A DNA stretch of 64,000 bases from Macrostomum hystrix. Lineage: Eukaryota > Animalia > Platyhelminthes. The notes under the pieces are model-generated. The model ran no database searches, had not been told where the DNA came from, and saw nothing but the letters and a program-made list of their open reading frames with translations. Positions 1,705 through 49,415 of the stretch are shown here, piece after piece (within the stretch, counting starts at the first letter, position 1; each line of letters begins with the position of its first letter). The stretch is taken from NCBI GenBank assembly GCA_950097015.1, contig CATNEN010000018.1, positions 1 through 64,000 of the forward strand. The letters are read 5' to 3'. Position numbers and translations under genes: made by a program.

Positions 1705-2993
1705 ATGTTTCCCTTACTCACAATACTCACCGCTGTCCTCCTGTACCTCATGAACTCACTTCATTCCTCACACCACCGAGAAGACGCACAAGAACTCACC
1801 GACCAGGACCTCCTCGCAGCCATCAGAGACGACCGAGTGGAACCCGTTCAGCGATTCATTAACAGCGGCGGCAGCCTCGATACCTTCATCGCCTATGCTG
1901 ACTCATTCTTTACTCCAGCAATGCTCGCTTGCCGATTCGGAAGACATGAAATTCTCCTGAGACTCATCCGAGCCATTGCAGATGTAGATAAGCAGAACTG
2001 GAGAGGGGCGACAGCATTGCATATTGCATCAGCATATGGTCACCACCGACTGGTGAAATCACTCATCAAAGCACGAGCCGACGTCAATCTTCAAGAAAAT
2101 ACTGGCGCCTCACCTCTCTACATTGCATCACAGCAAGGCCATAACGACGTCGTCCACTCACTCATCAAAGCACGAGCCGACGTCAATCTTCAAGATAATA
2201 CTGGCGCCTCACCTCTCTACATTGCATCACAGCAAGGCCATAACGACGTCGTCCACTCACTCATCAAAGCACGAGCCGACGTCAATCTTCAAGAGAAAGT
2301 CATTGGCGCCTCACCTCTCTACATTGCATCACTAAATGGCCATAACGACGTCGTCCACTCACTCATCAAAGCACGAGCCGACGTCAATCTTCAAGAGAAA
2401 GTCATTGGCGCCTCACCTCTCTACATTGCATCACTAAATGGCCATAACGACGTCGTCCACTCACTCATCAAAGCACGAGCCGACGTCAATCTTCAAGATA
2501 ATACTGGCGCCTCACCTCTCCACATTGCATCACTAAATGGCCATAACGACGTCGTCCACTCACTCATCAAAGCACGAGCCGACGTCAATCTTCAAGATAA
2601 TACTGGCGCCTCACCTCTCTACATTGCATCACAGCAAGGCCATAACGACGTCGTCCACTCACTCATCAAAGCACGAGCCGACGTCAATCTTCAAGATAAT
2701 ACTGGCGCCTCACCTCTCTACATTGCATCACAGCAAGGCCATAACGACGTCGTCCACTCACTCATCAAAGCACGAGCCGACGTCAATCTTCAAGATAATA
2801 CTGGCGCCTCACCTCTCTACATTGCATCACAAAATGGCCACCTCAGTGTTGTCGAGTCACTCATGAAGGTCGTTCATAGCCCCGACTTGCTGACAGCTGC
2901 TCTGCGAATCGCCACGGAAGTTGGCCATGACCCAGTGGTTGACCTGCTGAGCCCTGGATCATCCGCGCCATTGCCTGAGGAGAAGCAAAACAG
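1705..2993 (+). CDS. Ankyrin-repeat exon (predicted exon 1 of ANK-cGLR fusion gene A); unspliced ORF ends at TAG 2995-2997 (430 aa)
   Basis: Hydrophobic N-terminus MFPLLTILTAVLLYLM. About 10 ankyrin repeats, 8 of type (D/E)NT/EKVI-GASPLYIAS-xx-GHNDVVHSLIKARADVNLQ. Ends in the phase-2 donor AACAG|GTAGGA. Confidence 0.92.
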
Positions 2994-3663: not shown

Positions 3664-4268
3664 TGATGTGGAGTGTACTTCGGAATCGAGTGGGGTTGTG
3701 AGCCAGCCAAATTTTTCCATTTTTTTAGCAAGTTAATAATCGCGACCCACATAGCAGCTGGCCGCAGAACACCATCATTAATCTTAGGGCCAGACTTGGG
3801 GCGGAGGTGAATTAAGTAGCCGCCGATTCCCTTTGTCTCGGATCTGTCTAGTCCCCTGTAGGAGTGACTGATCGCGGAAATAGCAATACTGTATGGACTA
3901 GTTTAGGTTATAATTCTCCTCCAAACCGCGATCAGATTGTCGGGATCACTCATGCGTTTAGAGTGAGCTTTAATTCTTCATGTCCCTCTTCTTTACTGTA
4001 ACCCGAGCCGAAGCTCGATTATGACCTTTCCCCCTTTAGATACATGTAACGACACTATAGGCAGGTCGGCGCCTGCGCTTCCCATATCCCGGCGGGATCA
4101 CAATCATTGGCCGACTGCCGGCAGACGCTCCTAGTGGGGCATCTGGCGATTCTCGCCGTCGCTTCAGTGGGCAATTGGGGTGGCATAATGCCGACCCGAT
4201 TCCTCGCTGACAGGCTGGCGAGCATGTGGGTTATTTTGATGAATGCGAGGTTGGCGGAGCTGCAGGAC

Positions 4269-4276
4269 TATTTAAG
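4269..4276 (+). promoter_or_regulatory. Putative LTR TATA box (TATTTAAG)
   Basis: GGACTATTTAAG is conserved in all three LTR variants (also 45758 and 59270) while the flanks diverge. Confidence 0.6.
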
Positions 4277-4791
4277 AGAGCGCGCTGCGCTGCCCCTAGG
4301 ACAACCTTCCCAGGACACCTTTTCCTTTTTTCCGGGAGCCTTTCCCGGCAACCTACCTTCGAACCTACCTTCCACCGACCTTCCCCCGGACCTACGTGTC
4401 CGCCCTTACAACCTTTTTCCCTTGTCCGGTCCCGGAACTCGGTCCGTGGACTCTCCCCCTTCTAGGCTAGCACCTAGTCCCTGAGCCTAAGGCTCCAGAT
4501 CATAGCAGCAGGCAACTACCTGCTAGTGCCCTTAAGCGCAAGCCACCTCTTTAGGTGCGCTCCAAATTGAGCCTTGAGCTCCCTGCAGTCTGGCCCCTTG
4601 CCAACTGTACTTAGCAATTCCTCACCTCTCCTCCCGTTCATTTGCATTCCCCCGCGAGATCGACGGCCTGCAGCCTGTCAACCAGCGTATTCAGATAAGT
4701 AACCCGCGCAGCGGACTGTTATTGCTATCCCTAAGGGATTTACTATTTAGCTAGTGGGTAAAAGGGCAAGGGCAGGGATTTGATTTAGCCT

Positions 4792-4797
4792 AATAAA
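4792..4797 (+). promoter_or_regulatory. Putative LTR polyadenylation signal AATAAA
   Basis: TAATAAA is conserved at the equivalent position in the solo LTR (~46245) and E3 (~59734), followed by T-rich sequence. Confidence 0.55.
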
Positions 4798-6059
4798 ACT
4801 ATTAATTCACCGCTTATCTAATTTATTGGGCAATTTAATAACAACTTAAATCCTTTTTACTATGCATTTCACTTTCTCTTATTTTATCGTTAGACAGCCC
4901 TCGATCATGAGTGGCTAACTTATTAGGGGGATGGGCTCTGGCGATGCCTAGCTGAAAGCTGCGGCAGGAGGATAACTGTGAGCGCGCATGAAAGTAATAA
5001 GGAGCTAGGGATTTGCGAGTAAAATGCGGAGCGTAGCATGTGTTTCTCTGCTAGGGGTGGGGGAATTCCTTGGCGGGTTTTTCCTCTCTTTCTGGCAGAT
5101 CAAGGAGTGCGTGTCAACCTCCCTTGTCAATTAATGTTTCCCTTCTGTTCCCCGCCTCTCGCTGCCGCCGCCATGGGAGCGAGGGGTGTGATCTAATAAT
5201 CACCGCTTGCATAATCACTCAGCCAGTGTTCTGCTCAATCTCTCCTGCCTCTGATTTCCTCATCTCACACAGATTCGGATTTGCTAGTTATTTAATGTGT
5301 AGGCTGCAATCTAATGTAAGGAATGTGTCTAATGTCTCATGAGTAGGATTCTGGCTATGGATTTCTCATTCGGGTTCGGAGTACCACCTTTCTAGACCAC
5401 TGTAGCGCAGTTTCAGGAATCCCCTTGTGAGGCGTGACTCGATCCATTCTGGGGTTCTCACCCTAGTCTAAAACGGAAGTTACAGAATGCTCTATTTTTC
5501 GGCTTGTCTAAGATCTGTGTGACAAACTGGGAGCTGCGAGCTCCGGGGACCCAAGTTCCCAAATGTCTGCGGTGGCAACGCAGGCGCATTGGGTGGTGGC
5601 GCTACCTTCGATCATTATCCGCTTTGCCGATAGCCTTTCCGCATTTCTAAGACAAGAGCCTAGGCCGAGTCGACCACTGCTACCAAAGTTGGGAGTCAGT
5701 TACGAACATGCTACTGATGACAGTAGGCTATCTAGCCCTGTCCTATTCGCTTGCGGGTAGTCCGACATCTATTTAGACTTTTAGCCGGTTTCGAGCACTG
5801 CTTGGGGTGGGCACGGCAGTCATGCCTGTGGCCTATGGGTTGGGTGGGACTGGCCAGCCTGAGGCCAATAGGACCACTCACTTGCATCCTTTGTACCGCC
5901 TCATCTCTCCCTTCATCTCTCCCTTCATCCCTCCCTTCGTCATCCCTCTCTGCGACAACTCGCGGCAGCAGCGATCGACCTCCGACTCCATCGTCGTTTT
6001 CCACACTCCTATCTTTCATGAGGGCGGTCATCGGCTAGCAAAGACCCGCACTATTTCAA

Positions 6060-6077
6060 TGGTGGCAGCGGTGGGAT
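6060..6077 (+). other. Primer-binding site complementary to the tRNA-Leu 3' end
   Basis: TGGTGGCAGCGGTGGGAT starts 1 nt after the LTR. It is the reverse complement of ATCCCACCGCTGCCA+CCA, the 3' end of eukaryotic tRNA-Leu(AAG/TAG). Confidence 0.88.
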
Positions 6078-7360
6078 CTAGAAATGGCGCGAAACGAACT
6101 TGAATTTCAATTATTAGTTTAGCGCCGCAGATTTCTGTGGTAGCTTGCCGAAAGGGCTCCTTCTGGATTTCATTTTCCGTATGCCGAAATCTTATCTCAG
6201 TTCTAGTGACTGTCAATTAATTTCCGAACAGTTGCAATTTGGTTTCAATTTAATTTAGGCTTTTGTTAGAGTTTCCAAAATTCTGATTAGTGACTTTCTA
6301 CTATGAGTAGGCTGTGTGAGCGGACTTCATGCTAGAGTGTCTTCGGGTTAGTGGCTGCTGCAGGAGTCGGGGACTGTCTGTGGGGTTTTCCCGCGTGATT
6401 GATCTGGGAGGGGCCATTCTTAACGAGGGACCGGGCAACGCTTTCGGCCTTCTAACCGAGCGAGGGGAGCCCCCGGCAATGCAGCCGGGAATCGATGACT
6501 CGCTGAGCACCGGGGATTGGTTCTCTTGGGCAGCATGCAGGCCTGCTTACGTGTACCTGATTCTGAAAGTGTCACATAGCTTTGACCAAGTCTGACTTTG
6601 GTGGGGAACAGTTAGGGAGGTGGGACTTCTGAGGGAGGTCTAGCGACCCCCGTGCCCGCCTCTCGAAACTGCCTACTTCAAGTATGGGCTAGAATTCGGT
6701 CGGCACGTTTTTCTAAGAGATTCTTTGAGGGGTTTTCTAAATGGGGTAGCCAGGCTTTAGCCATGGACTCCTATCCGAGCGAGATCCCAGGTATATCCCC
6801 CCTGGGCTTCCCAGTCTCGTTAATCGCGAGGGGGGCCCCCGGCAATGCAGCCGGGAACCGATGACTCCCTGAACGAGTCGGGGATTATCCCTTCTCTGAG
6901 TATCTTATTGAGGCGTGTACTTTCCAAGGTAGGGTGATAGGCTGTTGCAGGCGCAAGCTTGCAGTAGTACTGACCCCGCCGTACCTATAGTGCAACAGTC
7001 CGCTATAGGGTTGCAGAACGAGTGCTAAGTTAAAACCTAGACTTCTATGTCCCAAACTTAAGTGCGCGCAAACAGTTGTCAGTAGCCAAGGCTGGAAGCA
7101 AAGCTAGCCAGGGCCCTGGGCCCTTTTCTCTCTCACTGATCTTTGATCCTTTTTGCGGTAGGGTTGCTCTCTAGGAGTAGGGAATTCGCCGCATCATTAA
7201 CCAGGGCTGGATTTGACAGCTCAGGCTCGTTTCTTTTCCCCCCTGCACGATCTCCAGTCGTGATCTGTGTTTTCCTTTTCCTCCCCTCCCCCATTGTTGC
7301 ATTAGCGACAGACCCCCCTCTTTTTCATTCGCAAAACCCTCATCCCTCTTTTGGCCGAAA

Positions 7361-10300
7361 ATGTCCGACCAGGAGGATGAGGTCGTCGAGGTGATCGGCG
7401 CCCCCCGTCCAACCAAAAGTAGGGCTGCCTCCGCAGAAAGGTGCCAGGAAAGGCGCCCTCTGCCTGCAACTGCAGCCCCGGGTACTCCTAGAACGGACCC
7501 GTGGGAGGTCCATCGGTGCCTCCTCGAACTGCTGCAGTCCGTAAGGTCCGACTTGCAATCGCTTAACGGCCCGGTGTACTCCCCGGTGTTGCGGCACTCG
7601 GTGGCCACCCAGACGGAAGGTGAACGACCGCAGGTGGTCAGGCCGGCGTATGGTTTCCGAATCCCGGTAGAGCCATTCGACCAAGGTCGCTCCGACATTG
7701 CCTCTTGGATGCTTCGACTGGAGGCAAAGTTTCAATTTGAGGAGGTCACCGACGATAGGGCCAGGAATGTGACCTGTTACAGCCTGTTGCCGGAAGAGAT
7801 GCAGTTAGAAAGTCTCCTGACGATTGACTTTGATGGCCCCTTTCAGCAGTTCCGGGCCAGGTTGCTAGACGGCTGTCTGGATTCCAGGTTGCCGGTAACT
7901 AAGAGGCGCACGGTAGAGCGACTGCAACCACGTTCGGGGGAGGCTCCCGAGGTGTTCTTAGTGCGGCTGAGGAAGCTCGTGGAGTGGGCTTATGCTGACT
8001 ATCCAGAGGACTGGCGGCAGAACGAGCTCAAACGGCTCTATCTACAGAACGGCCACTTCGATTCCAAATTCGCTTTTGAAGCGTTCTCGGCGAGGGACTG
8101 GACCCCGGAGGGCACGGTGTTTGAGCAGCGGAGGTCCGAGGAGGCTGACCGCGTCGCGCACGAGATTGAAAGCGAGCAACTAAGTTCAGCCTCCGAGGAC
8201 GCTTCGCTGTATCAGAGCTGTGCGTCCCCAGTGGGCAGCCCTCCTCGAGCCGCGGTCAGGGCGGTAGAGGCGGCAGACGAAGCTGGCCCCGCAGAATTCC
8301 GAAATGGAGTGGAGAAGGTGGGAGTCGGATCCCAACTAACGGCTGAACAGGAAAGGCAGCTGGGAGACTTGTTGCGGGCCAACGCCGACCTGTTCGCCGA
8401 CCAGGAGGAGGACCTGACGGTCACGACAGTGGTCCAGCATGAGATCACGCTGACCGACCCCCGGCCCGTGAAGTCGGCGCCGCGGAGGATTCCTCAGGCC
8501 TACCTCGAGGAGGTGCAGCAGATGGCCAGGGAGTGGTTGGAGACAGGGAAGGCCAGTCACTCGGCCAGTCCTTACTGCTCGCCGCTGGTGCTGGTGAAAA
8601 AGAAGGACGGCTCCCTCCGCGTCTGCATTGACTATAGGGAGCTCAACGAGCGGAGTGTGTCAGAGGTCACACCGCTGCCGCGCATCGACGAACTGCTGGC
8701 ATCGTTGCATGGGTCCTCCTATTTCACCACCCTGGATCTCCGCAGCGGGTACCACCAAGTGCCTATGCATGAAACTTGCAAACCATACACCGCATTCGCC
8801 GTCCCGGGAGTCGGGTTACTGCAGTGGAATGTGATGCCATTCGGGCTGAAGGGCGCACCAAGCACGTTCTCTCGTTTGATGAACCTGGTGCTGGCCGGCG
8901 TGCCGCAGCATGAGGCCATGGCGTACATCGACGACGTCATCGTGCACTCTGCTACCTTCGAGGAACACCTAGTCCGGCTCCAGAAGACATTCGACCGTCT
9001 GCGGGCGGCTAACCTGAAGATGAAGCCGTCCAAGTGCTTCCTTGCACAGCCCGAGATCTCTTTCCTAGGGCACACGGTGTCGGGAGCGGGCATCGCGACG
9101 GACCCTCATAAGACATGTGCGCTGTCCACGTGGCCACGACCGCGTACAGCCACCGACGTCCGCTCATTTTTAGGCGCGGTGGGCTACTACCGTGATTTCG
9201 TGCCGGAGTACAGCTGCCTCTCGGCGCCTCTTTGCGAACTCACCAAAAAGGGCCTTGTGGATGTGGAGCCCCTCTGGGACGACCGGCACGAGACCGCGTT
9301 CGAAGAACTGAAGGCGCGGATGGTCGAGGCGCCCGTGCTGGCCCACCCAAGTTTCGAGAAGGGCGCAGGGCGTTTCATACTCGACTGTGACGCCAGCCTG
9401 GAGTCCTTGGGGGCGGTGTTGAGCCAAGAACAGCCGGACGGGACGGAGAGGGTCTTGGCCTATGGCAGTAAGGCATTGTCCGCATCTCAGCGGAACTATT
9501 GCGTCACAAAACTAGAAATGCTGAGCCTCGTGTACTTCACCAGGAAGTACAGGTATTACCTACTGGGCCGCCGGTTCCTGGTCCGAACCGACCACAGCTC
9601 CCTCCAGTGGCTGAGGAGCTTTAAGGAGCCAACTGGCATGTATGCTCGGTGGGTGCAGCACCTGTCGCTATACGACTTCGACCTGGAGTATAGGAAGGGC
9701 AGCCTCCATACCAACGCCGACGCATTGAGTCGCCGGCCTAGACAGAGACACGGAGATTGCCCCGTTTGCCGGCCGTTGGAGCCCGGCAGTGAGGAAGAGA
9801 GTGAGGACGAAGGCGTGGTGGTAAACGCCGTCGCGGCGCAGGCAGTCATGGAACCGCCGCTGCAGCCCGAGGAATTGCTGGCCCAGCAGGTCGCCGACCC
9901 GGTGATCCATTGGATACTGCAAGCTAAGGTCAACGGTTTGGCCGCCCCAGACCCGGCCGCGGTCCCGGAGTTGAACGCCAAGCAGAAGGTCGCTTTGAAG
10001 AAGCTGTTGCCCTACTGGGACCTCTTGAGGGTGGAGGAGCAGCTGCTCAAAATCCAGGTGCACGCTCCCCCCCGGCCGCCGCTGTGGCTGCTCCCAGCAA
10101 GCCTCGACGAACAGGCTTTCCACTCGTGCCATAACGGGAGCTTAGCCGGGCATTTCGGGCGTCAAAAGACCCTGGCGCGTGTCGCCCAGCGGTTTTGGCG
10201 ACCAGGACTCCGCGCTTCGATGCAGAAGCTGTGCGCGCAGTGCCACGCCTGCCTGTGCAGCAAGAAGGGCCGCAGAGCTCAGGCTCCGCCGCAGCCATGG

Positions 10301-11506
10301 GAGAAAAGTCCGAAGTTCTCACGGATCCACCTAGACTTTGTCGGTCCCCTCGGCCGCGGCGGTCAGAGCATCCTCACGATCGTGGATAGCTACTCCGGCT
10401 GGGTCGAGGCGTTTCCTGTGGCCAACCAAACCGCTAAGGCAGTCACGAGGATCCTGTCCACAGAGTTCATCCCACGGTTCGGGGTGCCCGATTGGATCCA
10501 CAGTGACCAGGGCGCTCAATTCGAGTCGAGCCATTTCCGCGACTTTTGTCGGAAGCTGGGCATACGGAAGACCAGGACCACGCCCTACCACCCACAAGGC
10601 AACGGCATGGCGGAATCCCAGCACCGCACCCTGAAGGCACTGTTGACAACGGCCGTGGGCCGACACCACGAGAAGTGGAAGGCTCACCTGGGCGCTTGCC
10701 TTGCCGCCATGAGGTCCGCCGAACACTCCTTGACCGGATTTTCACCATTCTTCTTGGTGTATGGGCAGGAAGCCCGGCTGCCCGTAGACGTGGCACTGGC
10801 CGCGCCGGCCGAAGCACCTGCGCCCCATCATTACGCGGAGCAGCTCTTGCAGAACCTGGAGGAGGCTCAAGTGCAGCTGCAGGAGCAATTTAACCAGAAG
10901 CTCCAGGCGCAGGCCCGAATGGGGGACAGGCAACGAAAGACGGAGCTCGAGGTAGGGGCCGTTGTGTACCTGGCCCGCCATCAGATCGAAGGCTGGGAGA
11001 TTCCCAAATTTCACCAGGCCTACTCGGGACCATGGAAGGTGGTCGCGAAGCCGGGCGTGTCGATTTACGACGTCGCGCCGGTGACCCCGCAGCCCGGCCG
11101 ACAACAGACGTACCGGGTGCACCGCGACAACTTGCGAGCTGTTCCCAAGGAGGCCGGGGAAGTCCGACCAACCCAGGAGGCGGGCGAGAGGCAACCAAGG
11201 CAGGTGCAGCGTGGGCCCGGGCGGCCGCCCGTGAGGCCCAGGCCAGCCTCACCCCCGCCGAGGATGTTGAGGGCGGAAAGCGAGTCCGAGGACCAGTGGA
11301 GCGACGGCTCCTCTGACTCCGAGGAAAGCTGGTTGGGCCCCGAGGAACCGCCGCCGCAAAGAGTGGACGAGGGTCCGCGAGTGTTGAGGCCCCGGAATGG
11401 CATCCGACCCCCCGAGCGCTGGGGCTATGTCCGGAGGATTCTCCTCGGTGAACCCGAGTCCGACCCGGAGTCCTGGGCGAGGACCAACGGCCACGACCCG
11501 GGCTAG
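7361..11506 (+). CDS. gag-pol: Single-ORF Gag-Pol, 1381 aa: capsid-like gag, RT, RNase H, integrase with GPY/F; no recognisable protease or CCHC knuckle
   Basis: RT motifs VKKKDGSLRVCIDYRELN, LDLRSGYHQV, MPFGLKGAP and YIDD. RNase H motifs LDCDAS and TDHSSL. Integrase HHCC (H..GHFG..CAQCHAC), IHLDF, HSDQG, NGMAE and YSGPW. Confidence 0.96.
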   Translation: MSDQEDEVVEVIGAPRPTKSRAASAERCQERRPLPATAAPGTPRTDPWEVHRCLLELLQSVRSDLQSLNGPVYSPVLRHSVATQTEGERPQVVRPAYGFRIPVEPFDQGRSDIASWMLRLEAKFQFEEVTDDRARNVTCYSLLPEEMQLESLLTIDFDGPFQQFRARLLDGCLDSRLPVTKRRTVERLQPRSGEAPEVFLVRLRKLVEWAYADYPEDWRQNELKRLYLQNGHFDSKFAFEAFSARDWTPEGTVFEQRRSEEADRVAHEIESEQLSSASEDASLYQSCASPVGSPPRAAVRAVEAADEAGPAEFRNGVEKVGVGSQLTAEQERQLGDLLRANADLFADQEEDLTVTTVVQHEITLTDPRPVKSAPRRIPQAYLEEVQQMAREWLETGKASHSASPYCSPLVLVKKKDGSLRVCIDYRELNERSVSEVTPLPRIDELLASLHGSSYFTTLDLRSGYHQVPMHETCKPYTAFAVPGVGLLQWNVMPFGLKGAPSTFSRLMNLVLAGVPQHEAMAYIDDVIVHSATFEEHLVRLQKTFDRLRAANLKMKPSKCFLAQPEISFLGHTVSGAGIATDPHKTCALSTWPRPRTATDVRSFLGAVGYYRDFVPEYSCLSAPLCELTKKGLVDVEPLWDDRHETAFEELKARMVEAPVLAHPSFEKGAGRFILDCDASLESLGAVLSQEQPDGTERVLAYGSKALSASQRNYCVTKLEMLSLVYFTRKYRYYLLGRRFLVRTDHSSLQWLRSFKEPTGMYARWVQHLSLYDFDLEYRKGSLHTNADALSRRPRQRHGDCPVCRPLEPGSEEESEDEGVVVNAVAAQAVMEPPLQPEELLAQQVADPVIHWILQAKVNGLAAPDPAAVPELNAKQKVALKKLLPYWDLLRVEEQLLKIQVHAPPRPPLWLLPASLDEQAFHSCHNGSLAGHFGRQKTLARVAQRFWRPGLRASMQKLCAQCHACLCSKKGRRAQAPPQPWEKSPKFSRIHLDFVGPLGRGGQSILTIVDSYSGWVEAFPVANQTAKAVTRILSTEFIPRFGVPDWIHSDQGAQFESSHFRDFCRKLGIRKTRTTPYHPQGNGMAESQHRTLKALLTTAVGRHHEKWKAHLGACLAAMRSAEHSLTGFSPFFLVYGQEARLPVDVALAAPAEAPAPHHYAEQLLQNLEEAQVQLQEQFNQKLQAQARMGDRQRKTELEVGAVVYLARHQIEGWEIPKFHQAYSGPWKVVAKPGVSIYDVAPVTPQPGRQQTYRVHRDNLRAVPKEAGEVRPTQEAGERQPRQVQRGPGRPPVRPRPASPPPRMLRAESESEDQWSDGSSDSEESWLGPEEPPPQRVDEGPRVLRPRNGIRPPERWGYVRRILLGEPESDPESWARTNGHDPG

Positions 11507-13705
11507 GGAGAAGTAGTTTCCACTGCGGGCGCCCCAGAGCGCTCACTCGGCCGTGCTAGGCGACCAAGCCCCACTGGAATTTCGTGGCAAAGCCCCCGCC
11601 CTTCCGTTACTTCTCCCCTTTAGTAAAATGCGCACTCTGCACTTTTTGCTCCTTTTCTCCTATTGTGCACGCCTTCCTTTTTCATCAAAGCCGCCTTGGC
11701 ACAAAAATCTCATAAAAATTCTTATAATTTAGCCAGAAACCCAAAAACATACCTAGTGGGGTGAAATTCCCCTAGTACTTTTTCGCATGAGATGCCTATC
11801 TAAATGTAGCAATCTAGGGCATGCACCTTCTTTTCTCAAAGAGCATTTTACTTTTATTCGCACCACATCATGCATGGCACCTTTGCCTTATCTTGCTTCA
11901 TATTGGTGGGTCTGTGGGAGTTCAATTTAGGACAACTTCTAACTTAGGAGGGACACCAACCCGCTAAAGTGAGCGGGGTGGTATGCCATGGGAAATTCTA
12001 TGTTTCTTTAAGGGAGGGAAGGCGGTTTCAAATCAAAAAGGCCATCTCGGCGCCAAACCCTCTTAAAAACTCATATAAACTAATCAAAATCCAAAAAAAC
12101 ATACTTAGTGGGGTGAAACTCCCCTAGTACGAATTTTCGCATGAAATATTTTCGTAATAACTGCCGCAAACTAGGGTTCGCACCTACTTTTCGCAAACTT
12201 GCTTATCTTACATGTTCTCTATGCTTGGTTTCGGGAGTTTAGCTAAACCGGCTTCTATTTAGGGGGTATACCAACCCGCTAAAGTGAGCGGGGTGGTATG
12301 TTTCGGGAGTTTTTTTCTTAATGTTTGTTTAAAGAGTGGGCGGTTGTGAATCAAGAGGCCGGTAGGATCAGGTATTCAAATTCTAGGGGAGACAATCTGG
12401 CTGTTTCAATGAGCGACAGATTTCAAAATGATAATTTTTCTTTTGTTAGGGCTAGAAAAGACAAAAAGAAACATTATTTGGGGAGCCAGAAGTTAGCAGC
12501 TGGGCATTCAAATCTAGGTACCTAGGCGGGGACAGAATAGTGTTGAAAATGGCAGTCTAGATAATTTCCAATTTAACCGATCTCTAACCAGGGCAGGGTT
12601 TTTCACAGTTTCGGGTCAGGGTCAATTTCATTTTTTTGGATAATTAGGCGTGCCGTGGGTAGGGGGGGACTCTGGTTATTCTAATTCTTATGCAATAACC
12701 CTCGCAATTATCCTTAATAACCGGCCTTGGGGGGCCGAGTAGAAGTCAAATAACTCACCTTTCTTCTTCAGACTGCGGCTGGGCCATAGCACAAGGAGCA
12801 GAGCACGTATTTAGCTAATCGGGCGACGCAGGCTAGGTGGCGATTGCAGGCAAGCTAGCGGTAGTTTAGGTGTTTGTTTGGGAGATAAAGAGGCTTGAGG
12901 TTAATGGGGCGTCAAGTGTTTGCTTTTATAGGGCTAATTTAGGGAGACGTGGCGGTCTAACCGCCAGCCAATGGGAGCAAAGTGGGAATTCCGGGCAGGA
13001 CCAGTTTAGGGGGCTCATGGTAACAGTTTAGTTGTTGGGGCCCTGACCTTTTCGGTGAGGAGACACCTCGGCCGGCAACAGCATCACAAGCGGCCTGAGC
13101 AGCGGTTTCCCCAGCTGCGACCAGCTGCAGCGCCGATTGGGCCGCGCGCAACGGCTAGGCAACCGGCCCGACGAGAATTTTCGGGCCCGGCCAGCTGAAA
13201 ACACCTGGGCGCGCGGCGAATCAGAGGCTACCACGGCCCGGCAACGGAATCGGGAAGGCGCGAACGGACCGACCAACCCGGAGCCACCTGGGGAAGAGCA
13301 CGGCCGGACCCTCGGACTTAAGGAGAAAACGGCCGGAGCCTCCCGGGATTGCGCAACCGAGACCAAGCCGGGCAGGGAAAGACGGGGACAGCTGCAGCCA
13401 CCTGGAGGAGAAGGCGAGCCGGGACACGGCACCCCGGGACAGCGAGAACAACTCTAACTCAGCCGGAATGCGCACCCACCTCCCCTCAGGACTCTATCCC
13501 TTAGTCGCTAGGGGCGCCGACCTTTTACACTCTCGCACAAAATCTATTTATAGCAGTATTGTTACGTACGATAACTTAGGATTTCTTCTCTAGCGGTTTT
13601 CTTCTTAGGATTCTTTACGGTATGCAGTAGGGTAATGTAAGTTTTTGCCCCCTCGATTCGCGGGACACCCCACTACTAACAGTAAGCACGTAAGTGTCTT
13701 ACGTG

Positions 13706-13724
13706 AAAGTGAGCAAGGGCGGTG
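13706..13724 (+). other. Polypurine tract of E1
   Basis: AAAGTGAGCAAGGGCGGTG directly abuts the 3' LTR. It is preceded by the perfect inverted repeat CACGTAAG-tgt-CTTACGTG (13687-13705). Confidence 0.7.
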
Positions 13725-16119
13725 TGATGTGGAGTGTACTTCGGAATCGAGTGGGGTTGTGAGCCAGCCAAATTTTTCCATTTTTTTAGCAAGTTAATAA
13801 TCGCGACCCACATAGCAGCTGGCCGCAGAACACCATCATTAATCTTAGGGCCAGACTTGGGGCGGAGGTGAATTAAGTAGCCGCCGATTCCCTTTGTCTC
13901 GGATCTGTCTAGTCCCCTGTAGGAGTGACTGATCGCGGAAATAGCAATACTGTATGGACTAGTTTAGGTTATAATTCTCCTCCAAACCGCGATCAGATTG
14001 TCGGGATCACTCATGCGTTTAGAGTGAGCTTTAATTCTTCATGTCCCTCTTCTTTACTGTAACCCGAGCCGAAGCTCGATTATGACCTTTCCCCCTTTAG
14101 ATACATGTAACGACACTATAGGCAGGTCGGCGCCTGCGCTTCCCATATCCCGGCGGGATCACAATCATTGGCCGACTGCCGGCAGACGCTCCTAGTGGGG
14201 CATCTGGCGATTCTCGCCGTCGCTTCAGTGGGCAATTGGGGTGGCATAATGCCGACCCGATTCCTCGCTGACAGGCTGGCGAGCATGTGGGTTATTTTGA
14301 TGAATGCGAGGTTGGCGGAGCTGCAGGACTATTTAAGAGAGCGCGCTGCGCTGCCCCTAGGACAACCTTCCCAGGACACCTTTTCCTTTTTTCCGGGAGC
14401 CTTTCCCGGCAACCTACCTTCGAACCTACCTTCCACCGACCTTCCCCCGGACCTACGTGTCCGCCCTTACAACCTTTTTCCCTTGTCCGGTCCCGGAACT
14501 CGGTCCGTGGACTCTCCCCCTTCTAGGCTAGCACCTAGTCCCTGAGCCTAAGGCTCCAGATCATAGCAGCAGGCAACTACCTGCTAGTGCCCTTAAGCGC
14601 AAGCCACCTCTTTAGGTGCGCTCCAAATTGAGCCTTGAGCTCCCTGCAGTCTGGCCCCTTGCCAACTGTACTTAGCAATTCCTCACCTCTCCTCCCGTTC
14701 ATTTGCATTCCCCCGCGAGATCGACGGCCTGCAGCCTGTCAACCAGCGTATTCAGATAAGTAACCCGCGCAGCGGACTGTTATTGCTATCCCTAAGGGAT
14801 TTACTATTTAGCTAGTGGGTAAAAGGGCAAGGGCAGGGATTTGATTTAGCCTAATAAAACTATTAATTCACCGCTTATCTAATTTATTGGGCAATTTAAT
14901 AACAACTTAAATCCTTTTTACTATGCATTTCACTTTCTCTTATTTTATCGTTAGACAGCCCTCGATCATGAGTGGCTAACTTATTAGGGGGATGGGCTCT
15001 GGCGATGCCTAGCTGAAAGCTGCGGCAGGAGGATAACTGTGAGCGCGCATGAAAGTAATAAGGAGCTAGGGATTTGCGAGTAAAATGCGGAGCGTAGCAT
15101 GTGTTTCTCTGCTAGGGGTGGGGGAATTCCTTGGCGGGTTTTTCCTCTCTTTCTGGCAGATCAAGGAGTGCGTGTCAACCTCCCTTGTCAATTAATGTTT
15201 CCCTTCTGTTCCCCGCCTCTCGCTGCCGCCGCCATGGGAGCGAGGGGTGTGATCTAATAATCACCGCTTGCATAATCACTCAGCCAGTGTTCTGCTCAAT
15301 CTCTCCTGCCTCTGATTTCCTCATCTCACACAGATTCGGATTTGCTAGTTATTTAATGTGTAGGCTGCAATCTAATGTAAGGAATGTGTCTAATGTCTCA
15401 TGAGTAGGATTCTGGCTATGGATTTCTCATTCGGGTTCGGAGTACCACCTTTCTAGACCACTGTAGCGCAGTTTCAGGAATCCCCTTGTGAGGCGTGACT
15501 CGATCCATTCTGGGGTTCTCACCCTAGTCTAAAACGGAAGTTACAGAATGCTCTATTTTTCGGCTTGTCTAAGATCTGTGTGACAAACTGGGAGCTGCGA
15601 GCTCCGGGGACCCAAGTTCCCAAATGTCTGCGGTGGCAACGCAGGCGCATTGGGTGGTGGCGCTACCTTCGATCATTATCCGCTTTGCCGATAGCCTTTC
15701 CGCATTTCTAAGACAAGAGCCTAGGCCGAGTCGACCACTGCTACCAAAGTTGGGAGTCAGTTACGAACATGCTACTGATGACAGTAGGCTATCTAGCCCT
15801 GTCCTATTCGCTTGCGGGTAGTCCGACATCTATTTAGACTTTTAGCCGGTTTCGAGCACTGCTTGGGGTGGGCACGGCAGTCATGCCTGTGGCCTATGGG
15901 TTGGGTGGGACTGGCCAGCCTGAGGCCAATAGGACCACTCACTTGCATCCTTTGTACCGCCTCATCTCTCCCTTCATCTCTCCCTTCATCCCTCCCTTCG
16001 TCATCCCTCTCTGCGACAACTCGCGGCAGCAGCGATCGACCTCCGACTCCATCGTCGTTTTCCACACTCCTATCTTTCATGAGGGCGGTCATCGGCTAGC
16101 AAAGACCCGCACTATTTCA
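13725..16119 (+). repeat. E1 3' LTR (2395 bp)
   Basis: Copy of 3664-6058. No difference was found in the segments compared by eye. Confidence 0.96.
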
Positions 16120-16420
16120 ATTACAGGTTTGGGATTTAATATTACAGGTTTGGGATTCAATATTACAGGTTTGGGATTCAATATTACAGGCTCGGGATTT
16201 AATATTACAGGTTTGGGGTTCAGTATTACAGGTTTGGGATTCAATATTACAGGCTAGGGATTTAATATTACAGGTTTGAGATTCAATATTACAGGCTCGG
16301 GATTTAATATTACAGGCTCCGGATTTAATATTACAGGTTTGGGGTTCAATATTACAGGTTTGGGATTAAATGTTACAGGTTCGGGATTAAATGTTACAGG
16401 TTTGAGATTCAATGTTACAG
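16120..16420 (+). repeat. 21-bp minisatellite, right part
   Basis: ATTACAGGTTTGGGATTTAAT units resume in register after the TSD. Confidence 0.95.
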
Positions 16421-16562: not shown

Positions 16563-16654
16563 TGAAACTCAGCACTGCCGCCTCCTCTCACCCTTCAGAG
16601 CCTCCCAGCCTCACTGAACCTCAGCACTGCCGCCTCCTCTCACCCTTCAGAGCC
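16563..16654 (+). repeat. 52-bp repeat (2 units), each containing a 3' splice-site-like CCTCCTCTCACCCTTCAG
   Basis: Unit ACTGAAACTCAGCACTGCCGCCTCCTCTCACCCTTCAGAGCCTCCCAGCCTC. Copy B has 7 units. Confidence 0.9.
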
Positions 16655-17000
16655 GCACCCAGCGACGCAGAGCTGAGCCAGCAGCTGCACTCCAAGCTCT
16701 CTCAGTCGGGATTCGTGGACTCCAGAGCCGCCTTGCAGATCGCTGTGGCTGACGTCTTGCAGGATGTCCTCAGGAAGAGATGGAACTTTAAGAACTGGTT
16801 CGCTGTGGGCAGCTTCTCTGAGGCCTGGGGCAACAGCCTGGTCTCTCTGGATGGCAGAACTGACATCGACTCTGACATCGATGTTATTCAGCTGATTCCA
16901 GGAAGGCCGATTCACCCGAGAGATGTGTGCGAGTGCGACCGAGTGGAGGCTGCTCAGACAGTGGAGCTCAGCAATGGCCACATCCTGAGCTCCGGATTCG
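16651..17000 (+). CDS. Predicted exon 2 of gene A: N-terminal part of the Mab-21/cGAS-like NTase
   Basis: WFAVGSFSEAWG...DIDSDIDVI carries the hGS and DxD NTase motifs. Phase-2 acceptor CCCTTCAG|A at 16650/1. Phase-1 donor TTCG|GTGAGA at 17000/1. Confidence 0.82.
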
Positions 17001-18151: not shown

Positions 18152-19887
18152 CTTCCAACCCAGCCTCCACTCAAGATGGCTCCGCCCTGAGACCGTCTGT
18201 GGACGAAGTCACCGCCCGCCGCCTCTGCCGCTACCCTCCCATCGCGCCGCTGCAGCCACCAAGAGTCTCCAACTCCAACATCCCCCAGTCCGTGCTGCAG
18301 TCGCTCCAGCGAGACCTCACCTCTGCCTCATCGCCCTGTCACGTGGTGCACGCAGCTCCTCCCGGAATGGGGGGCCAGCAGCTCCGAGTGAGCAGCAGCT
18401 TCCTGGAGAGGCGACTGCTGCGGAGTCTCAGCACTCTGCAAGGCCAGCTGTTCGTCACACTCAAGTGGCTGCTGAAGAAGAAAATCTCAAACGTCGGCTT
18501 CAAGTCCTATCACGCAAAGACCGTCACGTTCCGAATGCTGGAGGAGACACCTGCTGAGCAGTGGAAGCCGGAGAATCTCGTGACTCTCACGACACGCTCG
18601 CTGCAGATTTTGCTTGACGGTGTGGAGAGCGGCTGCAGATCAGACACACCTGACGGTCGGATCCTGGAGCACTTCTTCCTGAGCGATGCCGCTGTGTACC
18701 TGAAGGGCTTGAAGTCAGCTGAGAGAGTGAGCGAAGCGTTGAATCGGGCAGCCGGCGCATTGAGAGACGCCATGGCTGAGCTGCCTCAGCTGCTGCTGCA
18801 GTTCGAGGACAGTCTGCGACCCGTCACCGACTCGGGCCGATTCCACTTCCAACCGTTCCTCATCCTGCCTCTACTCAATGACCGACCCGTGTCAGAAGCC
18901 AAGACATGCGAGTTCCACGAGATCTACGACATCGTGAGAGAGTCCGTGCTTCGTCTGTCCGATGGAGACCGCAGCCCGCAGTCCCGAGAGAGTCTCGCAG
19001 AGCTGATCAACAAACTGCCAGACTGCGCCCGATCAGCGCGAGAGTCTCTCAGAGCGCTGGCCTGCCTGAAGTTCGGCGACAGACGCACTGCTGAAAAAGT
19101 TGTGAGCGACTGCGGGCCGTTCAGTGCGAGCAGAGGCATCGATTGGGGAGCTGAGAGGTCGGCGAGTGAGGCCACTGCGGACTTTGTGTGGCAGCACCTG
19201 AAGAGCCGAGACTCCGCCTGGAAATTCTGCTTGGAGTTTGACGAGCGACCGAAGCTGCCGATTCAGCACGAAGTCTTTGCCGACTGCTTTCCGCTGCAGA
19301 TGATAAACTACAGCACATACTTCTACCTGAACTTTGATGCTCTGCTGCGGGCTCTTTGCAATGAGCTGACAGTAGCAGGAGACCGGAGCGATCAGGACTG
19401 GATCCGGGATGTGGCTCAGAGGGAGGATGCGGATGAGCAGGAGCTGCTGGTGGCTGCGGCGATATGCGGAGATCTGGAGCTGCTGCGGCGGCTGCGCAGA
19501 AGAATCACTCACGAGCTGTGCCGGCTGCCAGGGTGGCTGCAGCAGAAGATTGAGAGGCTGAGCAGTCAAGGTGAAGATCGCCAAGACCAAGGTGAAGATC
19601 GCCAAGACCAAGGTGAAGATCGCCAAGACCAAGGTGAAGATCGCCAAGACCAAGGTGAAGATCGCCAAGACCAAGGTGAAGATCGCCAAGACCAAGGTGA
19701 AGATCGCCAAGACCAAGGTGAACATCGCCAAGACCAAGGTGAAGATCGCCAAGACCAAGGTGAACATCGCCAAGACCAAGGTGAAGATCGCCAAGACCAA
19801 GAGATTCAAGAGATTGAGACATCTGGCGAAGAGCCGCCGCAGCAAAAGGCAAAAAGGCTGCAGAGAAAGCGAAAATCGGTCGAGTAA
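18152..19887 (+). CDS. Predicted exon 3 of gene A: Mab-21/cGLR core and C-lobe plus repetitive acidic tail
   Basis: Phase-matched acceptor TTTTTCTCCAG|CT. VDEVTA supplies the candidate third acidic residue. [20 protein letters not shown] and LEHFFL are typical Mab-21 family motifs. Exons 1-3 total 3375 nt, an exact multiple of 3. Confidence 0.85.
19567..19797 (+). repeat. Coding 21-bp repeat, 11 x QGE(D/H)RQD
   Basis: CAAGGTGAAGATCGCCAAGAC units lie in frame. Copy B has only ~1.5 units before its stop. Confidence 0.95.
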
Positions 19888-41924: not shown

Positions 41925-43012
41925 ATGTTTCCCTTACTCACAATACTCACGGCTGTCCTCGTGTACCTCATGAACTCACTTCATTCCTCACACCACCGAG
42001 AAGACGCACAAGAACTCACCGACCAGGACCTGCTCGCAGCCATCAGAGACGACCGAGTGGAGCCCGTTCAGCGATTCATTAACAGCGGCTGGAGCCTCGA
42101 TACCTTCATCGCCTATGCTGACTCATTCTTTACTCCAGCAATGCTCGCTTGCCGATTCGGAAGACATGAAATTCTCGTGAGACTCATCCGAGCCATTGCA
42201 GATGTAGATAAGCAGAACTGGAGAGGGACGACAGCATTGTGGATGGCATCACAATATGGTCACCACCGACTGGTGAAATCACTCATCAAAGCACGAGCCG
42301 ACGTCAATCTTCAAAGAAATACTGGCTCCTCACCTCTCTACATTGCATCACAAAATGGCCATAAGGACGTCGTCCACTCACTCATCAAAGCACGAGCCGA
42401 CGTCAATCTTCAAGAGAAAGTCTATGGCCGCTCACCTCTCTACATTGCAACACAATATGGCCACAAGGACGTCGTCGACTCACTCATCAAAGCACGAGCC
42501 GACGTCAATCTTCAAGAGAAAGTCTATGGCCGCTCACCTATCTACATTGCATCACAATATGGCCATAAGGAGGTCGTCCACTCACTCATCAAAGCACGAG
42601 CCGACGTCAATCTTCAAACAAATACTGGCGAGTCACCTCTCTACATTGCATCACAGCAAGGCCATAAGGACGTCGTCAACTCACTCATCAAAGCACGAGC
42701 CGACGTCAATCTTCAAAGAAATACTGGCTTCTCACCTCTCAACATTGCATCACAATATGGCCATAAGGACGTCATCGGCTCACTCATCAAAGCACGAGCC
42801 GACGTCAATCTTCAAACAAATACTGGCTCCTCACCTCTCTACATTGCATCACAAAATGGCCACCTCAGTGTTGTTGAGTCACTCATGAAGGTCGTTGATA
42901 GCCCAGAATTGCTGGAAGCTGCTCTGCGAATCGCCACGGAAGTTGGCCATGACCCAGTGGTTGACCTGCTGAGCCCTGGATCATCCGCGCCTCTGCCTGA
43001 GAAGCAGAACAG
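41925..43012 (+). CDS. Ankyrin-repeat exon (predicted exon 1 of gene B); unspliced ORF ends at TAG 43014-43016 (363 aa)
   Basis: Paralogue of 1705-2993 with 6 rather than 8 internal modules. Phase-2 donor AACAG|GTAGGA. Confidence 0.92.
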
Positions 43013-43760: not shown

Positions 43761-44112
43761 GTGAAACTCATCACTGCCGCCTCCTCTCACCCTTCAGAGC
43801 CTCCCAGCCTCACTGAAACTCAGCACTGCCGCCTCCTCTCACCCTTCAGAGCCTCCCAGACTCACTGAAACTCAGCACTGCCGCCTCCTCTCACCCTTCA
43901 GAGCCTCCCAGCCTCACTGAAACTCAGCACTGCCGCCTCCTCTCACCCTTCAGAGCCTCCCAGCCTCACTGAAACTCAGCACTGCCGCCTCCTCTCACCC
44001 TTCAGAGCCTCCCAGCCTCACTAAACCTCAGCACTGCCGCCTCCTCTCACCCTTCAGAGCCTCCCAGCCTCACTGAAACTCAGCACTGCCGCCTCCTCTC
44101 ACCCTTCAGAGC
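43761..44112 (+). repeat. 52-bp repeat, 7 units, each with a CCCTTCAG acceptor-like site
   Basis: CCCTTCAG ends at ~43797, 43849, 43901, 43953, 44005, 44057 and 44109. Confidence 0.93.
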
Positions 44113-44459
44113 CGCACCCAGCGACGCAGAGCTGAGCCAGCAGCTGCACTCCAAGCTCTCTCAGTCGGGATTCGTGGACTCCAGAGCCGCCTTGCAGATC
44201 GCTGTGGCTGACGTCTTGCAGGATGTTCTCACGAAGAGATGGAACAATGACGACTGGTTCGCTGTGGGCAGCTTCTCTGAGGCCTGGGGCAACAGCCTGG
44301 TCTCTCTGGATGGCAGAACTGACATTGACTCTGACATCGATGTTATTCGGCTGATTCCAGGAAGGCCGATTCACCCGAGAGATGTGTGCGAGTGCGACCG
44401 AGTGGAGGCTGCTCAGACAGTGGAGCTCAGCAATGGCCACATCCTGAGCTCCGGATTCG
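44110..44459 (+). CDS. Predicted exon 2 of gene B (Mab-21/cGAS-like NTase, GS and DxD motifs)
   Basis: 350 nt, the same length as in gene A. WFAVGSFSEAWG...SDIDV. Donor TTCG|GTGAGA. Confidence 0.8.
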
Positions 44460-47958: not shown

Positions 47959-49415
47959 CCTCCAACCCAGCCGACACTCAACGAGGCTCCGCCCTGAGAC
48001 CGGCTGTGGATTACGTCACCGCCCGCCGCCTCTGCCGCTACCCTTCCATCGCGCCGCTGCAGCCACCAAGAGTCTCCAACTCCAACATCCCCCAGTCCGT
48101 GCTGCAGTCGCTCCAGCGAGACCTCACCTCTGCCTCATCGCCCTGTCACGTGGTGCACGCAGCTCCTCCTGGAATGGGGGGCCAGCAGCTCCGAGTGAGC
48201 AGCAGCTTCCTGGAGAGGCGACTGCTGCAGAGTCTCAGCACTCTGCAAGGCCAGCTGTTCGTCACACTCAAGTGGCTGCTTAAGAAGAAAATCTCAAACG
48301 TCGGCTTCAAGTCCTATCACGCAAAGACCGTCACGTTCCGAATGCTGGAGGAGACACCGGCTGAGCAGTGGAAGCCGGAGAATCTCGTGACTCTCACGAA
48401 ACGCTCGCTGCAGATTTTGCTTGACGGTGTGGAGAGCGGCTGCAGATCAGACACACCTGACGGTCGGATCCTGGAGCACTTCTTCCTGAGCGATGCCGCT
48501 GTGTACCTGAAAAGCTTGAAGTCGCCCACATCAGCTGAGAGAGTGAGCGAAGCGTTGAATCGGGCAGCCGGTGCATTGAGAGACGCCATGGCTGAGCTGC
48601 CTCAGCTGCTGCTGCAGTTCGAGGACAGTCTGCGACCCGTCACCGACTCGGGCCGATTCCACTTCCACCCGTTCCTCATCCTGCCAGTTCTTTGGCTCAC
48701 ACCTGTACCAGAAGCCAAGACATGCGAGTTCCACGAGATCTACGACATCGTGAGGGAGTCAGTGCTTCGTGTGTCCGATGGAGACCGCAGCTCGCAGTCC
48801 CGAGAAAGTCTCGCAGGGCTGATCGACAAACTGCCAGACTGCGCCCGATCAGCGCGAGAGTCTCTTAGAGCGCTGGCCTGCCTGAAGTTCGGCGACCGAC
48901 GCACTGCTGCGAGAGTTGTGAGCGACTGCGGGCCGTTCAGTGCGAGCAGAGGCATCGATTGGGGAGCTGAGAGGTCAGCGAGTGAGGCCACTGCGGACTT
49001 TGTGTGGCAGCACCTGAGGAGCCGAGACTCCGCCTGGAAATTCTGCCTTGTGTTTGACGAGCGACCGAAGCTGCCGATTGAGCACGAAGTCTTTGCCGAC
49101 TGCTTTCCGCTGCAGATGATGAACTACAGCACATACTTCTACCTGAACTTTGACGCTCTGCTGCGGGCTCTTCGCAATGATCTGACAGGAGCAGTAGACC
49201 GGAGCGATCAGGACTGGATCCGGGATGTGGCTCAGAGGGAGGATGCGGATGAGCAGGAGCTGCTGGTGGCTGCGGCGATATGCGGAGATCTGGAGCTGCT
49301 GCGGCGGCTGCGCAGAACAATCACTCACGAACTGTGCCGGCTGCCAGGGTGGCTGCAGCAGAAGATTGAGAGGCTGAGCAGTCAAGGTGAAGATCTCCAA
49401 GACCAAGGTGAATAA
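47959..49415 (+). CDS. Predicted exon 3 of gene B (Mab-21/cGLR core and C-lobe)
   Basis: Acceptor TTTCTCCAG|CC is in frame with ORF 48006-49415. [20 protein letters not shown]. Exons total 2895 nt (964 aa plus stop). Confidence 0.85.

What the first reader, a model, noticed from the sequence alone, without database searches (positions are those of the whole stretch)
2030..2860. Ankyrin modules vary at binding-face positions, like a natural DARPin library
The framework CTCATCAAAGCACGAGCCGACGTCAATCTTCAA (LIKARADVNLQ) is identical in every internal module of both genes. Changes concentrate in the beta-hairpin (ENT, DNT, RNT, TNT, EKVI, EKVY), the residue after Gly (A, S, R, E, F) and the two residues before GH (QQ, LN, QN, QY, AY). 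Established: these are the concave-surface positions randomised in designed ankyrin repeat proteins. Module number also differs (8 vs 6). Copy A module 7 is a chimera (DNT hairpin + LN helix), consistent with intragenic recombination or conversion. Inference: the locus diversifies a recognition surface by module shuffling and replacement substitution, as variable immune receptors do.
Basis: partly seen in the sequence, partly recalled or inferred. Interest (0 to 1): 0.85.

Follow-up and report, generated by a model that had tools for sequence, protein, structure and literature searches.

The report
Hypervariable ankyrin arrays in cGAS-like genes
Two neighbouring flatworm genes join a cGAS-like enzyme to a string of near-identical ankyrin repeats that differ almost only at the residues that normally touch a ligand. 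Fungal immune receptors are built the same way, so these genes may be an inherited, fast-reshuffling set of sensors.

Summary
The 33-nt framework occurs 14 times without a mismatch, 8 in gene A and 6 in gene B. Most variation among the 99/102-nt modules sits in the beta-hairpin codons, the codon after Gly and the two codons before Gly-His.

Three homologous arrays from Macrostomum lignano add 34 internal modules. There, 98% of amino-acid entropy lies at those positions, which include five of the six positions randomised in DARPins. Diversity is about 0.4 per nucleotide at hot codons and 0 at four-fold sites of the framework.

Each genome has its own fixed framework (concerted evolution). Several hot-codon states are shared between the two, and they occur in all combinations, so recombination happens inside modules.

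Both arrays are exon 1 of expressed, spliced ankyrin plus Mab21/cGAS-like genes.

This is the "high internal conservation" repeat regime known from fungal NLRs, and lately from NLRs elsewhere. Here it sits on a cGAS-like receptor, which I did not find described.

A formal dN/dS above 1 is not shown: the hot codons are saturated, with omega about 1. Nothing points to somatic diversification.

First readers of this scan noted the same pattern at seven other places in this genome.

The parts
1705..2993 (+). Gene A exon 1: N-terminal hydrophobic helix, degenerate first repeat, ankyrin array, C-terminal cap; ends at an AG|GT donor
   Evidence: ORF and Pfam Ank_2 E=3e-120. The donor is placed by homology with gene B, whose junction is seen in RNA-type contigs. 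The spliced model is in frame, 1124 aa.
2059..2831 (+). Gene A tandem array of 99/102-nt ankyrin modules. Module starts: 1996, 2095, 2194, 2293, 2395, 2497, 2596, 2695, 2794. The chimeric DNT+LN module is 2497-2595.
   Evidence: mean identity among internal modules is 90% aa and 93.5% nt
3664..16121 (+). Gypsy-type LTR retrotransposon inside intron 1 of gene A, inserted in a 21-nt minisatellite; not part of the receptor
   Evidence: LTRs 3664-6060 and 13725-16121 are 100% identical; RT/RNase H/integrase ORF at 7361-11506
16651..17000 (+). Gene A exon 2: start of the Mab21/cGAS-like part, with a Gly-Ser and Asp-x-Asp motif
   Evidence: tblastn with M. lignano P0121; the splice-site context is identical to gene B
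18152..19887 (+). Gene A exon 3: Mab-21 C-terminal domain, a further helical region, and a 7-residue acidic tandem repeat at the end
41925..43012 (+). Gene B exon 1: same layout as A with 6 framework copies. Module starts: 42216, 42315, 42414, 42516, 42618, 42717, 42816.
   Evidence: Contigs of RNA-type runs cover it and join 43012 to 44110 across a GT..AG intron. The AF2 model shows helix pairs with a 33-residue period.
44110..44459 (+). Gene B exon 2 (Mab21/cGAS-like N-terminal part)
   Evidence: joint and loose ends in RNA-type runs X2, X5, X6; tblastn
47959..49415 (+). Gene B exon 3 (Mab-21 C-terminal domain and helical tail)
   Evidence: The loose ends after 44459 match the sequence at 47959. 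Pfam Mab-21_C is weak. The spliced model is in frame, 964 aa.

Best explanation
These are germline ankyrin arrays of the 'high internal conservation' (HIC) type, and they form the probable ligand-sensing arm of ankyrin plus Mab21/cGAS-like receptor genes. Shown: frequent unequal crossing-over and short-tract conversion between the 99-nt modules keep the framework identical, even at silent sites, and change module number and order quickly. Inferred: selection keeps a small alphabet of alternative residues at the hairpin (positions 1-3, plus a one-codon insertion), at position 5 and at positions 13-14, which are the concave binding face. Recombination inside modules re-assorts these states, so each paralogue shows a different binding surface on the same scaffold. 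Inferred and untested: ligand binding by the array controls the attached nucleotidyltransferase.
For: Framework identity: 14 exact 33-nt copies; diversity at four-fold sites of framework codons is 0.000 in both data sets. Hot codons: diversity is 0.39 per nt in the window and 0.42 in M. lignano, against 0.028 and 0.003 in the rest. Alternative states differ by 2-4 nt. Position: 5 of 6 DARPin-randomised positions vary (P=0.0005 in 34 M. lignano modules; alignment). Hot positions lie before helix 1 and at its end in the model. Concerted evolution: about 10 nt of the framework are fixed differently in all window modules and all M. lignano modules. Yet the 34-residue EKVx module type, Glu(GAG) at position 5, and the CAA-AAT and CAG-CAA pairs occur in both. 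Shuffling: 17 hot haplotypes among 34 modules, with all four combinations between sites 12 and 24 nt apart. Speed: M. lignano arrays M1 and M2 sit behind 98.6%-identical upstream DNA and an N-terminus with 1 silent change in 130 codons, yet they differ in module number, order and content. Independent data: the four variants seen in the gene B array in other runs are all non-synonymous, and three are at hot codons. Gene context: spliced and expressed; Mab-21_C in 11 of 12 relatives; the family profile hits cGAS (E=1.5e-5); the top 50 fold matches are all MAB21L1, cGAS or cGLR, though weak; M. lignano relatives are listed among cGLRs by Li et al. 2023.
Against: No formal excess of replacement over silent change: crude omega at hot codons is 1.0-1.3 and the codons are saturated. 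Only 5 arrays from 2 genomes were analysed, with no population sample. Modules are not independent samples. In the window a third of the amino-acid entropy lies off the hot columns, some of it on the outer helix. Gene A's array is largely recent duplicates. The ligand, the enzymatic activity and the third catalytic residue are all unresolved: the nucleotidyltransferase core was modelled poorly (pLDDT below 50). I did not establish the window's species myself.
Confidence: 0.65

Rival explanations
1. Neutral by-product. The arrays are very young tandem amplifications, and the few variable positions are simply the least constrained surface residues of any ankyrin repeat. No selection for diversity is involved.
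For: Surface positions are the most variable in ordinary ankyrin proteins, including the divergent paralogues P0149, P0155 and P0157. Gene A contains identical duplicate modules. Omega at hot codons is not above 1.
Against: Homogenisation that wipes out all silent variation in the framework should wipe out neutral variation 10-30 nt away too. Instead the hot codons differ by 2-4 nt and reach a diversity of about 0.4. The same states and the same one-codon insertion type persist in two genomes whose frameworks have each become fixed differently.
Confidence: 0.13
2. The diversification is real but not immune. The arrays bind endogenous partners, and paralogues diverge through subfunctionalisation or reproductive conflict; the attached domain may be catalytically dead.
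For: Nothing here links the genes to infection. The third catalytic residue could not be placed, and the Pfam nucleotidyltransferase-core model did not match.
Against: The architecture and evolutionary regime match those of non-self receptors (fungal HIC NLRs, PMC4986451 and PMC13449251). Similar HIC ankyrin arrays sit on bivalve STAND/CARD proteins. The family is clustered and expanded, with omega 0.5-1 across the whole gene.
Confidence: 0.15
3. A targeted mutational or somatic mechanism (hypermutation or cassette assembly, as in Ig or VLR genes) writes the hot codons.
For: Hot codons are also diverged at third positions, as a mutational process would give. The pattern looks like a designed library.
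Against: Identical hot-codon states recur in two genomes and in many modules, so they are inherited and not made anew. No donor cassettes or flanking signals were seen. Only assembler contigs were available, and they cannot show rare somatic variants.
Confidence: 0.04
4. Assembly artefact: mis-assembled or collapsed repeats create apparent module variants.
For: 99-nt near-identical repeats are hard to assemble. M. lignano gene models skip modules (P0121 has 4 modules where the genome has 10).
Against: The same architecture is present in two independent assemblies. Contigs from separate RNA-type runs match gene B modules without a mismatch (for example 42399-42503). Both reading frames are intact.
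Confidence: 0.03

Closest known systems
High internal conservation (HIC) ANK/TPR/WD40 repeats of fungal NLRs (Podospora HNWD genes and PNP_UDP/NACHT/ANK genes; Dyrka et al. 2014, PMC4986451; Ament-Velasquez et al. 2026, PMC13449251)
   Same: Near-identical repeats; repeat-number differences; concerted evolution with repeat exchange; a handful of hypervariable positions on the inner helix and hairpin of the concave face; proposed role in fast change of binding specificity.
   Different: The signalling module here is a Mab21/cGAS-like domain, not a STAND ATPase. The host is an animal, so fungal repeat-induced point mutation does not apply. Allelic polymorphism and site-wise positive selection, shown in fungi, are untested here.
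Ankyrin-cGLR fusions catalogued among animal cGAS-like receptors (Li et al. 2023, 10.1101/2023.02.22.529553)
   Same: An ankyrin array joined to a cGLR-type domain. M. lignano members of this family appear in that paper's protein table.
   Different: In the parts I read, that survey lists the domain architecture only. I found no description of internal repeat conservation, hypervariable positions or array turnover.
Designed ankyrin repeat proteins (DARPins)
   Same: One fixed 33-residue framework, with variation at positions 2, 3, 5, 13 and 14 (alignment to 6mol_A).
   Different: These arrays are natural. Position 33 never varies and position 1 does. There is a one-residue hairpin insertion variant. 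Each site uses a small alphabet, not near-full randomisation.
HIC ankyrin arrays on bivalve nSTAND3/CARD proteins and a sponge protein (P0165, P0171, P0151, P0256, P0163)
   Same: Animal proteins whose ankyrin repeats are 70-83% identical to each other and vary mainly at positions 1-3, 5, 9 and 13-14.
   Different: Different signalling domains. Only protein sequences were examined, so silent-site homogenisation was not checked.
Lamprey variable lymphocyte receptors
   Same: A repeat scaffold whose modules carry the variable binding residues; diversity arises by combining modules.
   Different: VLRs are assembled somatically from LRR cassettes. Here all the diversity seen is germline, between paralogues.

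Membership tests
Ankyrin repeat proteins | 33-residue helix-turn-helix-hairpin repeats matching the Pfam Ank models | tested here: met
   Ank_2 E=3e-120 (A) and 7e-109 (B); PDB hits to ankyrin-1 and DARPins; helix pairs with a 33-residue period in the AF2 model
HIC (high internal conservation) repeat receptors | Repeats at least 85% identical over at least 100 residues (criterion of Dyrka et al. 2014) | tested here: met
   Gene A 90% over 233 aa; M. lignano arrays 88-92%. Gene B at 79% falls just short.
HIC (high internal conservation) repeat receptors | Repeat-number variation and repeat shuffling | tested here: met
   6 vs 8 framework copies here; 10, 11 and 16 framework-bearing modules in M. 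lignano; different order behind near-identical flanks; four-gamete violations. This was shown between paralogues only. Allelic polymorphism was not tested.
HIC (high internal conservation) repeat receptors | Few hypervariable positions on the binding surface | tested here: met
   98% (M. lignano) and 66% (window) of amino-acid entropy lies in 7 columns; 5 of 6 DARPin positions vary
HIC (high internal conservation) repeat receptors | Site-wise positive selection (omega above 1) at those positions | tested here: inconclusive
   Crude spanning-tree counts give omega 1.0-1.3 with saturation. No recombination-aware model could be run.
NLR / STAND receptors | Central NACHT, NB-ARC or other STAND ATPase domain | tested here: not met
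   No such Pfam match in any exon product. The partner domain is Mab21-like.
cGAS-like receptors (cGLR / Mab21 family) | Mab-21 C-terminal domain and cGAS-like fold | tested here: met
   Mab-21_C in 11 of 12 relatives, best E=4.6e-6, and below Pfam's cut-off for the window's own products. The profile hits cGAS chains at E=1.5e-5. The top 50 fold matches are all MAB21L1, cGAS or cGLR, but with E no better than 0.035 on a low-confidence model.
cGAS-like receptors (cGLR / Mab21 family) | Complete catalytic set (Gly-Ser loop and three acidic residues) and nucleotide synthesis | tested here: inconclusive
   Gly-Ser and Asp-x-Asp are invariant in the family alignment. The third acidic residue could not be placed because the core has pLDDT below 50. 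Activity cannot be tested with these tools.
Somatically diversified receptors (VLR / Ig type) | Differences between germline and somatic copies within one animal | not testable with these tools
   Only assembler contigs of older runs were available, and they drop rare variants

The most novel reading that the evidence does not exclude
The arrays are direct protein-binding paratopes that switch on a cGAS-like enzyme. They are polymorphic between individuals in module number and content, under balancing selection. That would give a flatworm an NLR-like, rapidly re-assorting non-self receptor repertoire wired to nucleotide second-messenger signalling, a sensing mode not yet described for cGLRs.
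Probability: 0.3. Interest if true: 0.8.

Novelty: new variant of a known kind. Interest (0 to 1): 0.6.

Why it matters
Most animal cGAS-like receptors have no known ligand, and those characterised sense nucleic acids. A clustered family in which the enzyme is fused to a hypervariable, fast-reshuffling protein-binding scaffold suggests some cGLRs recognise diverse, probably protein, ligands. It also suggests that the repeat-homogenisation-plus-hypervariable-site strategy described for fungal NLRs has been recruited by a second, unrelated class of immune signalling enzyme in animals. Macrostomum lignano, which carries close relatives of these arrays, is to my knowledge amenable to RNAi and transgenesis, so the idea could be tested there. 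The natural alphabet of residues tolerated on this very regular framework may also interest designers of repeat-protein binders.

Tried and rejected
1. Searching with exon 1 of gene B alone was swamped by generic ankyrin proteins, and the length window excluded full-length relatives. Searching with exon 3 and with a long M. lignano array worked.

2. Exact look-ups of window proteins in public assemblies found nothing, so I did not establish the window's species. The closest public proteins are M. lignano at about 70% identity, and there is no non-coding similarity to the M. lignano loci.

3. I suspected the 27-nt stretch shared exactly with M. lignano meant nucleotide-level constraint. Framework dS (0.16; 3 changes in 21 sites) is not significantly below exon 3 dS (0.37), so I dropped that idea.

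4. Classical dN/dS at hot codons is uninformative because of saturation and recombination.

5. The AF2 model of the Mab21 part was too poor in the catalytic core to place residues. The fold search on it gives only weak, though uniform, cGAS/MAB21L1 hits.

6. Logan contigs break at the 36-nt identical framework, so module order and allelic repeat number could not be read from public runs.

7. No paper on Macrostomum ankyrin-cGLR arrays was found.

Full report
**What is at the coordinates**

The window is repeat-rich animal DNA. ORF 1705-2997 (430 aa) and ORF 41925-43016 (363 aa) are strong ankyrin-repeat proteins (Pfam Ank_2 E=3e-120 and 7e-109).

Shuffled sequence gives none. Tandem Repeats Finder reports 99-nt arrays at 2059-2831 (96% matches) and 42279-42862 (90%).

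It also confirms the chimeric DNT+LN module, at 2497-2595.

**The genes**

Each ORF ends at an AG|GT donor. Downstream ORFs are homologous to spliced M. lignano proteins that run from an ankyrin array into a Mab21-like domain.

Three public runs lack depth over the introns, so they are RNA-type. Their contigs cover gene B's exons, join 43012 to 44110 across a GT..AG intron, and continue from 44459 into the sequence at 47959.

The three-exon models are in frame: A is 1124 aa and B is 964 aa.

Evidence that the second domain is cGAS-like is consistent but weak:
- Mab-21_C matches 11 of 12 relatives.
- A family profile hits cGAS chains at E=1.5e-5.
- The top 50 fold matches of a low-confidence model are all MAB21L1, cGAS or cGLR.
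- Li et al. 2023 list M. lignano members among cGLRs and note ankyrin fusions.

Gene A's first intron holds a 12.5-kb Gypsy element with identical LTRs.

The two genes belong to a tandemly duplicated unit of about 40 kb, made of gene plus satellites. Between A and B, dS is 0.03-0.07 outside the arrays.

**A larger sample**

All relatives found through the Mab21 part are from Macrostomum lignano, at 70% identity or less. I fetched two M. lignano loci. They carry three arrays of the same module family, with 10, 11 and 16 framework-bearing modules.

Among their 34 internal modules, amino acids vary only at positions 1, 2, 3, a one-codon hairpin insertion, 5, 13 and 14. The exceptions are one singleton at position 10 and one silent change at position 29. 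These columns hold 98% of the amino-acid entropy; in the window they hold 66%.

Aligned to a DARPin chain, positions 2, 3, 5, 13 and 14 are DARPin-randomised positions. That the randomised set is 2, 3, 5, 13, 14 and 33 is from my own knowledge of the Binz et al. design, and the module-to-module differences visible in that chain agree with it.

Overlap is 5 of 6 (P=0.0005 in M. lignano, 0.025 in the window). Position 33 never varies. Position 1, fixed in DARPins, does vary.

In a single-sequence AF2 model (pLDDT 67), helix 1 spans positions 7-14 and helix 2 spans 17-25. The hot positions therefore sit in the hairpin, just before helix 1, and at its end.

**What kind of variation**

Nucleotide diversity among modules is 0.39 (window) and 0.42 (M. 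lignano) at hot codons. It is 0.028 and 0.003 in the remaining codons, and exactly 0 at four-fold sites of the framework.

Alternative hot states differ by two to four nucleotides. Third positions of hot codons are as diverged as the others. A crude spanning-tree count therefore gives omega of only 1.0-1.3.

The telling contrast is with silent framework sites 10-30 nt away, which show no variation at all.

**Concerted evolution with retained states**

About 10 framework nucleotides differ between the window and M. lignano. Each difference is fixed in every module of its genome.

Yet both genomes share:
- the 34-residue EKVx module type;
- Glu (GAG) at position 5;
- the pairs CAA-AAT (Gln-Asn) and CAG-CAA (Gln-Gln) at positions 13-14.

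The framework is thus homogenised within each genome, while an older alphabet of binding-face states persists. Within the window, all A modules have Asn17 and all B modules have Lys17, so homogenisation is mostly within an array.

**Shuffling and speed**

M. lignano shows 17 hot-codon haplotypes among 34 modules. All four combinations occur between codon 1 and position 5 (12 nt apart) and between position 5 and positions 13-14 (24 nt apart). The states involved differ by 2-4 nt, so recurrent mutation is implausible.

Arrays M1 and M2 follow 98.6%-identical upstream DNA and an N-terminus with one silent difference in 130 codons. They still differ in module number, order and content.

In the positionally homologous first module of A and B, all 7 nucleotide differences are replacements, at positions 5, 9, 10 and 13.

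In other public runs, the four variants seen inside the gene B array are all replacements. Two are at the inserted hairpin codon, one at position 2 and one at position 21. Framework k-mers reach 20-40 times single-copy depth in the DNA run, so the genome holds many such modules.

**Comparison with what is known**

This is the regime described for fungal NLR repeats with high internal conservation. Those show near-identical ANK, TPR or WD40 repeats, repeat-number polymorphism, concerted evolution, and a few hypervariable positions on the concave face (PMC4986451). A 2026 study extends such NLRs to animals, plants and prokaryotes (PMC13449251).

Gene A and the M. lignano arrays meet the 85%-identity criterion. 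Gene B, at 79%, falls just short.

The genes are not NLRs, because they have no STAND ATPase. I also saw internally conserved ankyrin arrays with the same variable positions on mussel nSTAND3/CARD proteins and on a sponge protein.

I did not find this regime described on a cGAS-like receptor.

First readers of this scan noted the same pattern at seven other places in this genome. I did not check those.

**Verdict**

It overreaches on de novo replacement substitution and on the analogy with somatically variable receptors.

Still open:
- The function of the array as the sensing arm of the enzyme is inferred, not shown.
- Catalytic competence is unresolved.
- No population or tissue data were available.

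Noticed in passing
window 3664-16121: Gypsy-type LTR retrotransposon with two 2397-nt LTRs that are 100% identical and an intact 1381-aa Gag-Pol ORF. It is inserted in the 21-nt minisatellite of gene A's first intron, so the insertion is very recent. Gene B's intron has the uninterrupted minisatellite (43170-43613).
   Followed up: partly
window 1-1554 and 40849-41788: Each gene is preceded, about 150 nt upstream of its start codon, by 0.9-1.5 kb of pure pyrimidine (CT-rich) microsatellite on the coding strand. The whole gene-plus-satellite unit of about 40 kb is tandemly duplicated, with the same series of 22-, 16-, 20- and 14-nt satellites after each gene.
   Followed up: no
window 43762-44113 (and the shorter copy before 16651): The acceptor of exon 2 lies in the last unit of a 52-nt tandem repeat (6.8 copies), and every unit carries the same ...ttcag|AGCC context. 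There are therefore several potential alternative 3' splice sites, each shifting the frame.
   Followed up: no
window 44110 (run X5): One RNA-type contig reaches exon 2 at 44110 from 255 nt of unrelated upstream sequence. Either a paralogue or an alternative first exon is spliced to the same acceptor.
   Followed up: no
window 19567-19801 vs 49380-49415: Gene A ends in 11 copies of a 21-nt repeat encoding an acidic QGEDRQD heptad. Gene B has barely two copies and stops early. The C-terminal tail length is as unstable as the ankyrin array.
   Followed up: no
window 1705-1995 / 41925-42215 vs L002 10001-10291: The 97-codon N-terminal region is saturated at silent sites against M. lignano (pS 0.83), while exon 3 has dS 0.37 and the repeat framework 0.16. 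The genes therefore have mosaic histories (exchange among family members). Both species keep a hydrophobic or amphipathic N-terminal helix, possibly a membrane anchor.
   Followed up: partly
L001 10001-14625, L002 10001-29445: The public M. lignano gene models P0121 and P0122 contain 4 ankyrin modules where the genome encodes 10-11 in one open frame. The model in L002 also spans two separate genes. The annotation has collapsed the repeats.
   Followed up: partly
proteins P0165, P0171, P0151, P0256 (Mytilus), P0163 (Amphimedon): Mussel nSTAND3/CARD-ankyrin proteins and a sponge protein have internally conserved ankyrin arrays (up to 83% mean identity among 14 repeats). They vary at the same positions: 1-3, 5, 9 and 13-14.
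   Followed up: partly
window 36081-39360 and 20029-28224: A 47-nt satellite (70 copies, 98% matches) that mimics ORFs of more than 1100 codons on the minus strand, and an 8-kb 22/44-nt satellite with higher-order structure. No sign that either is coding.
   Followed up: no
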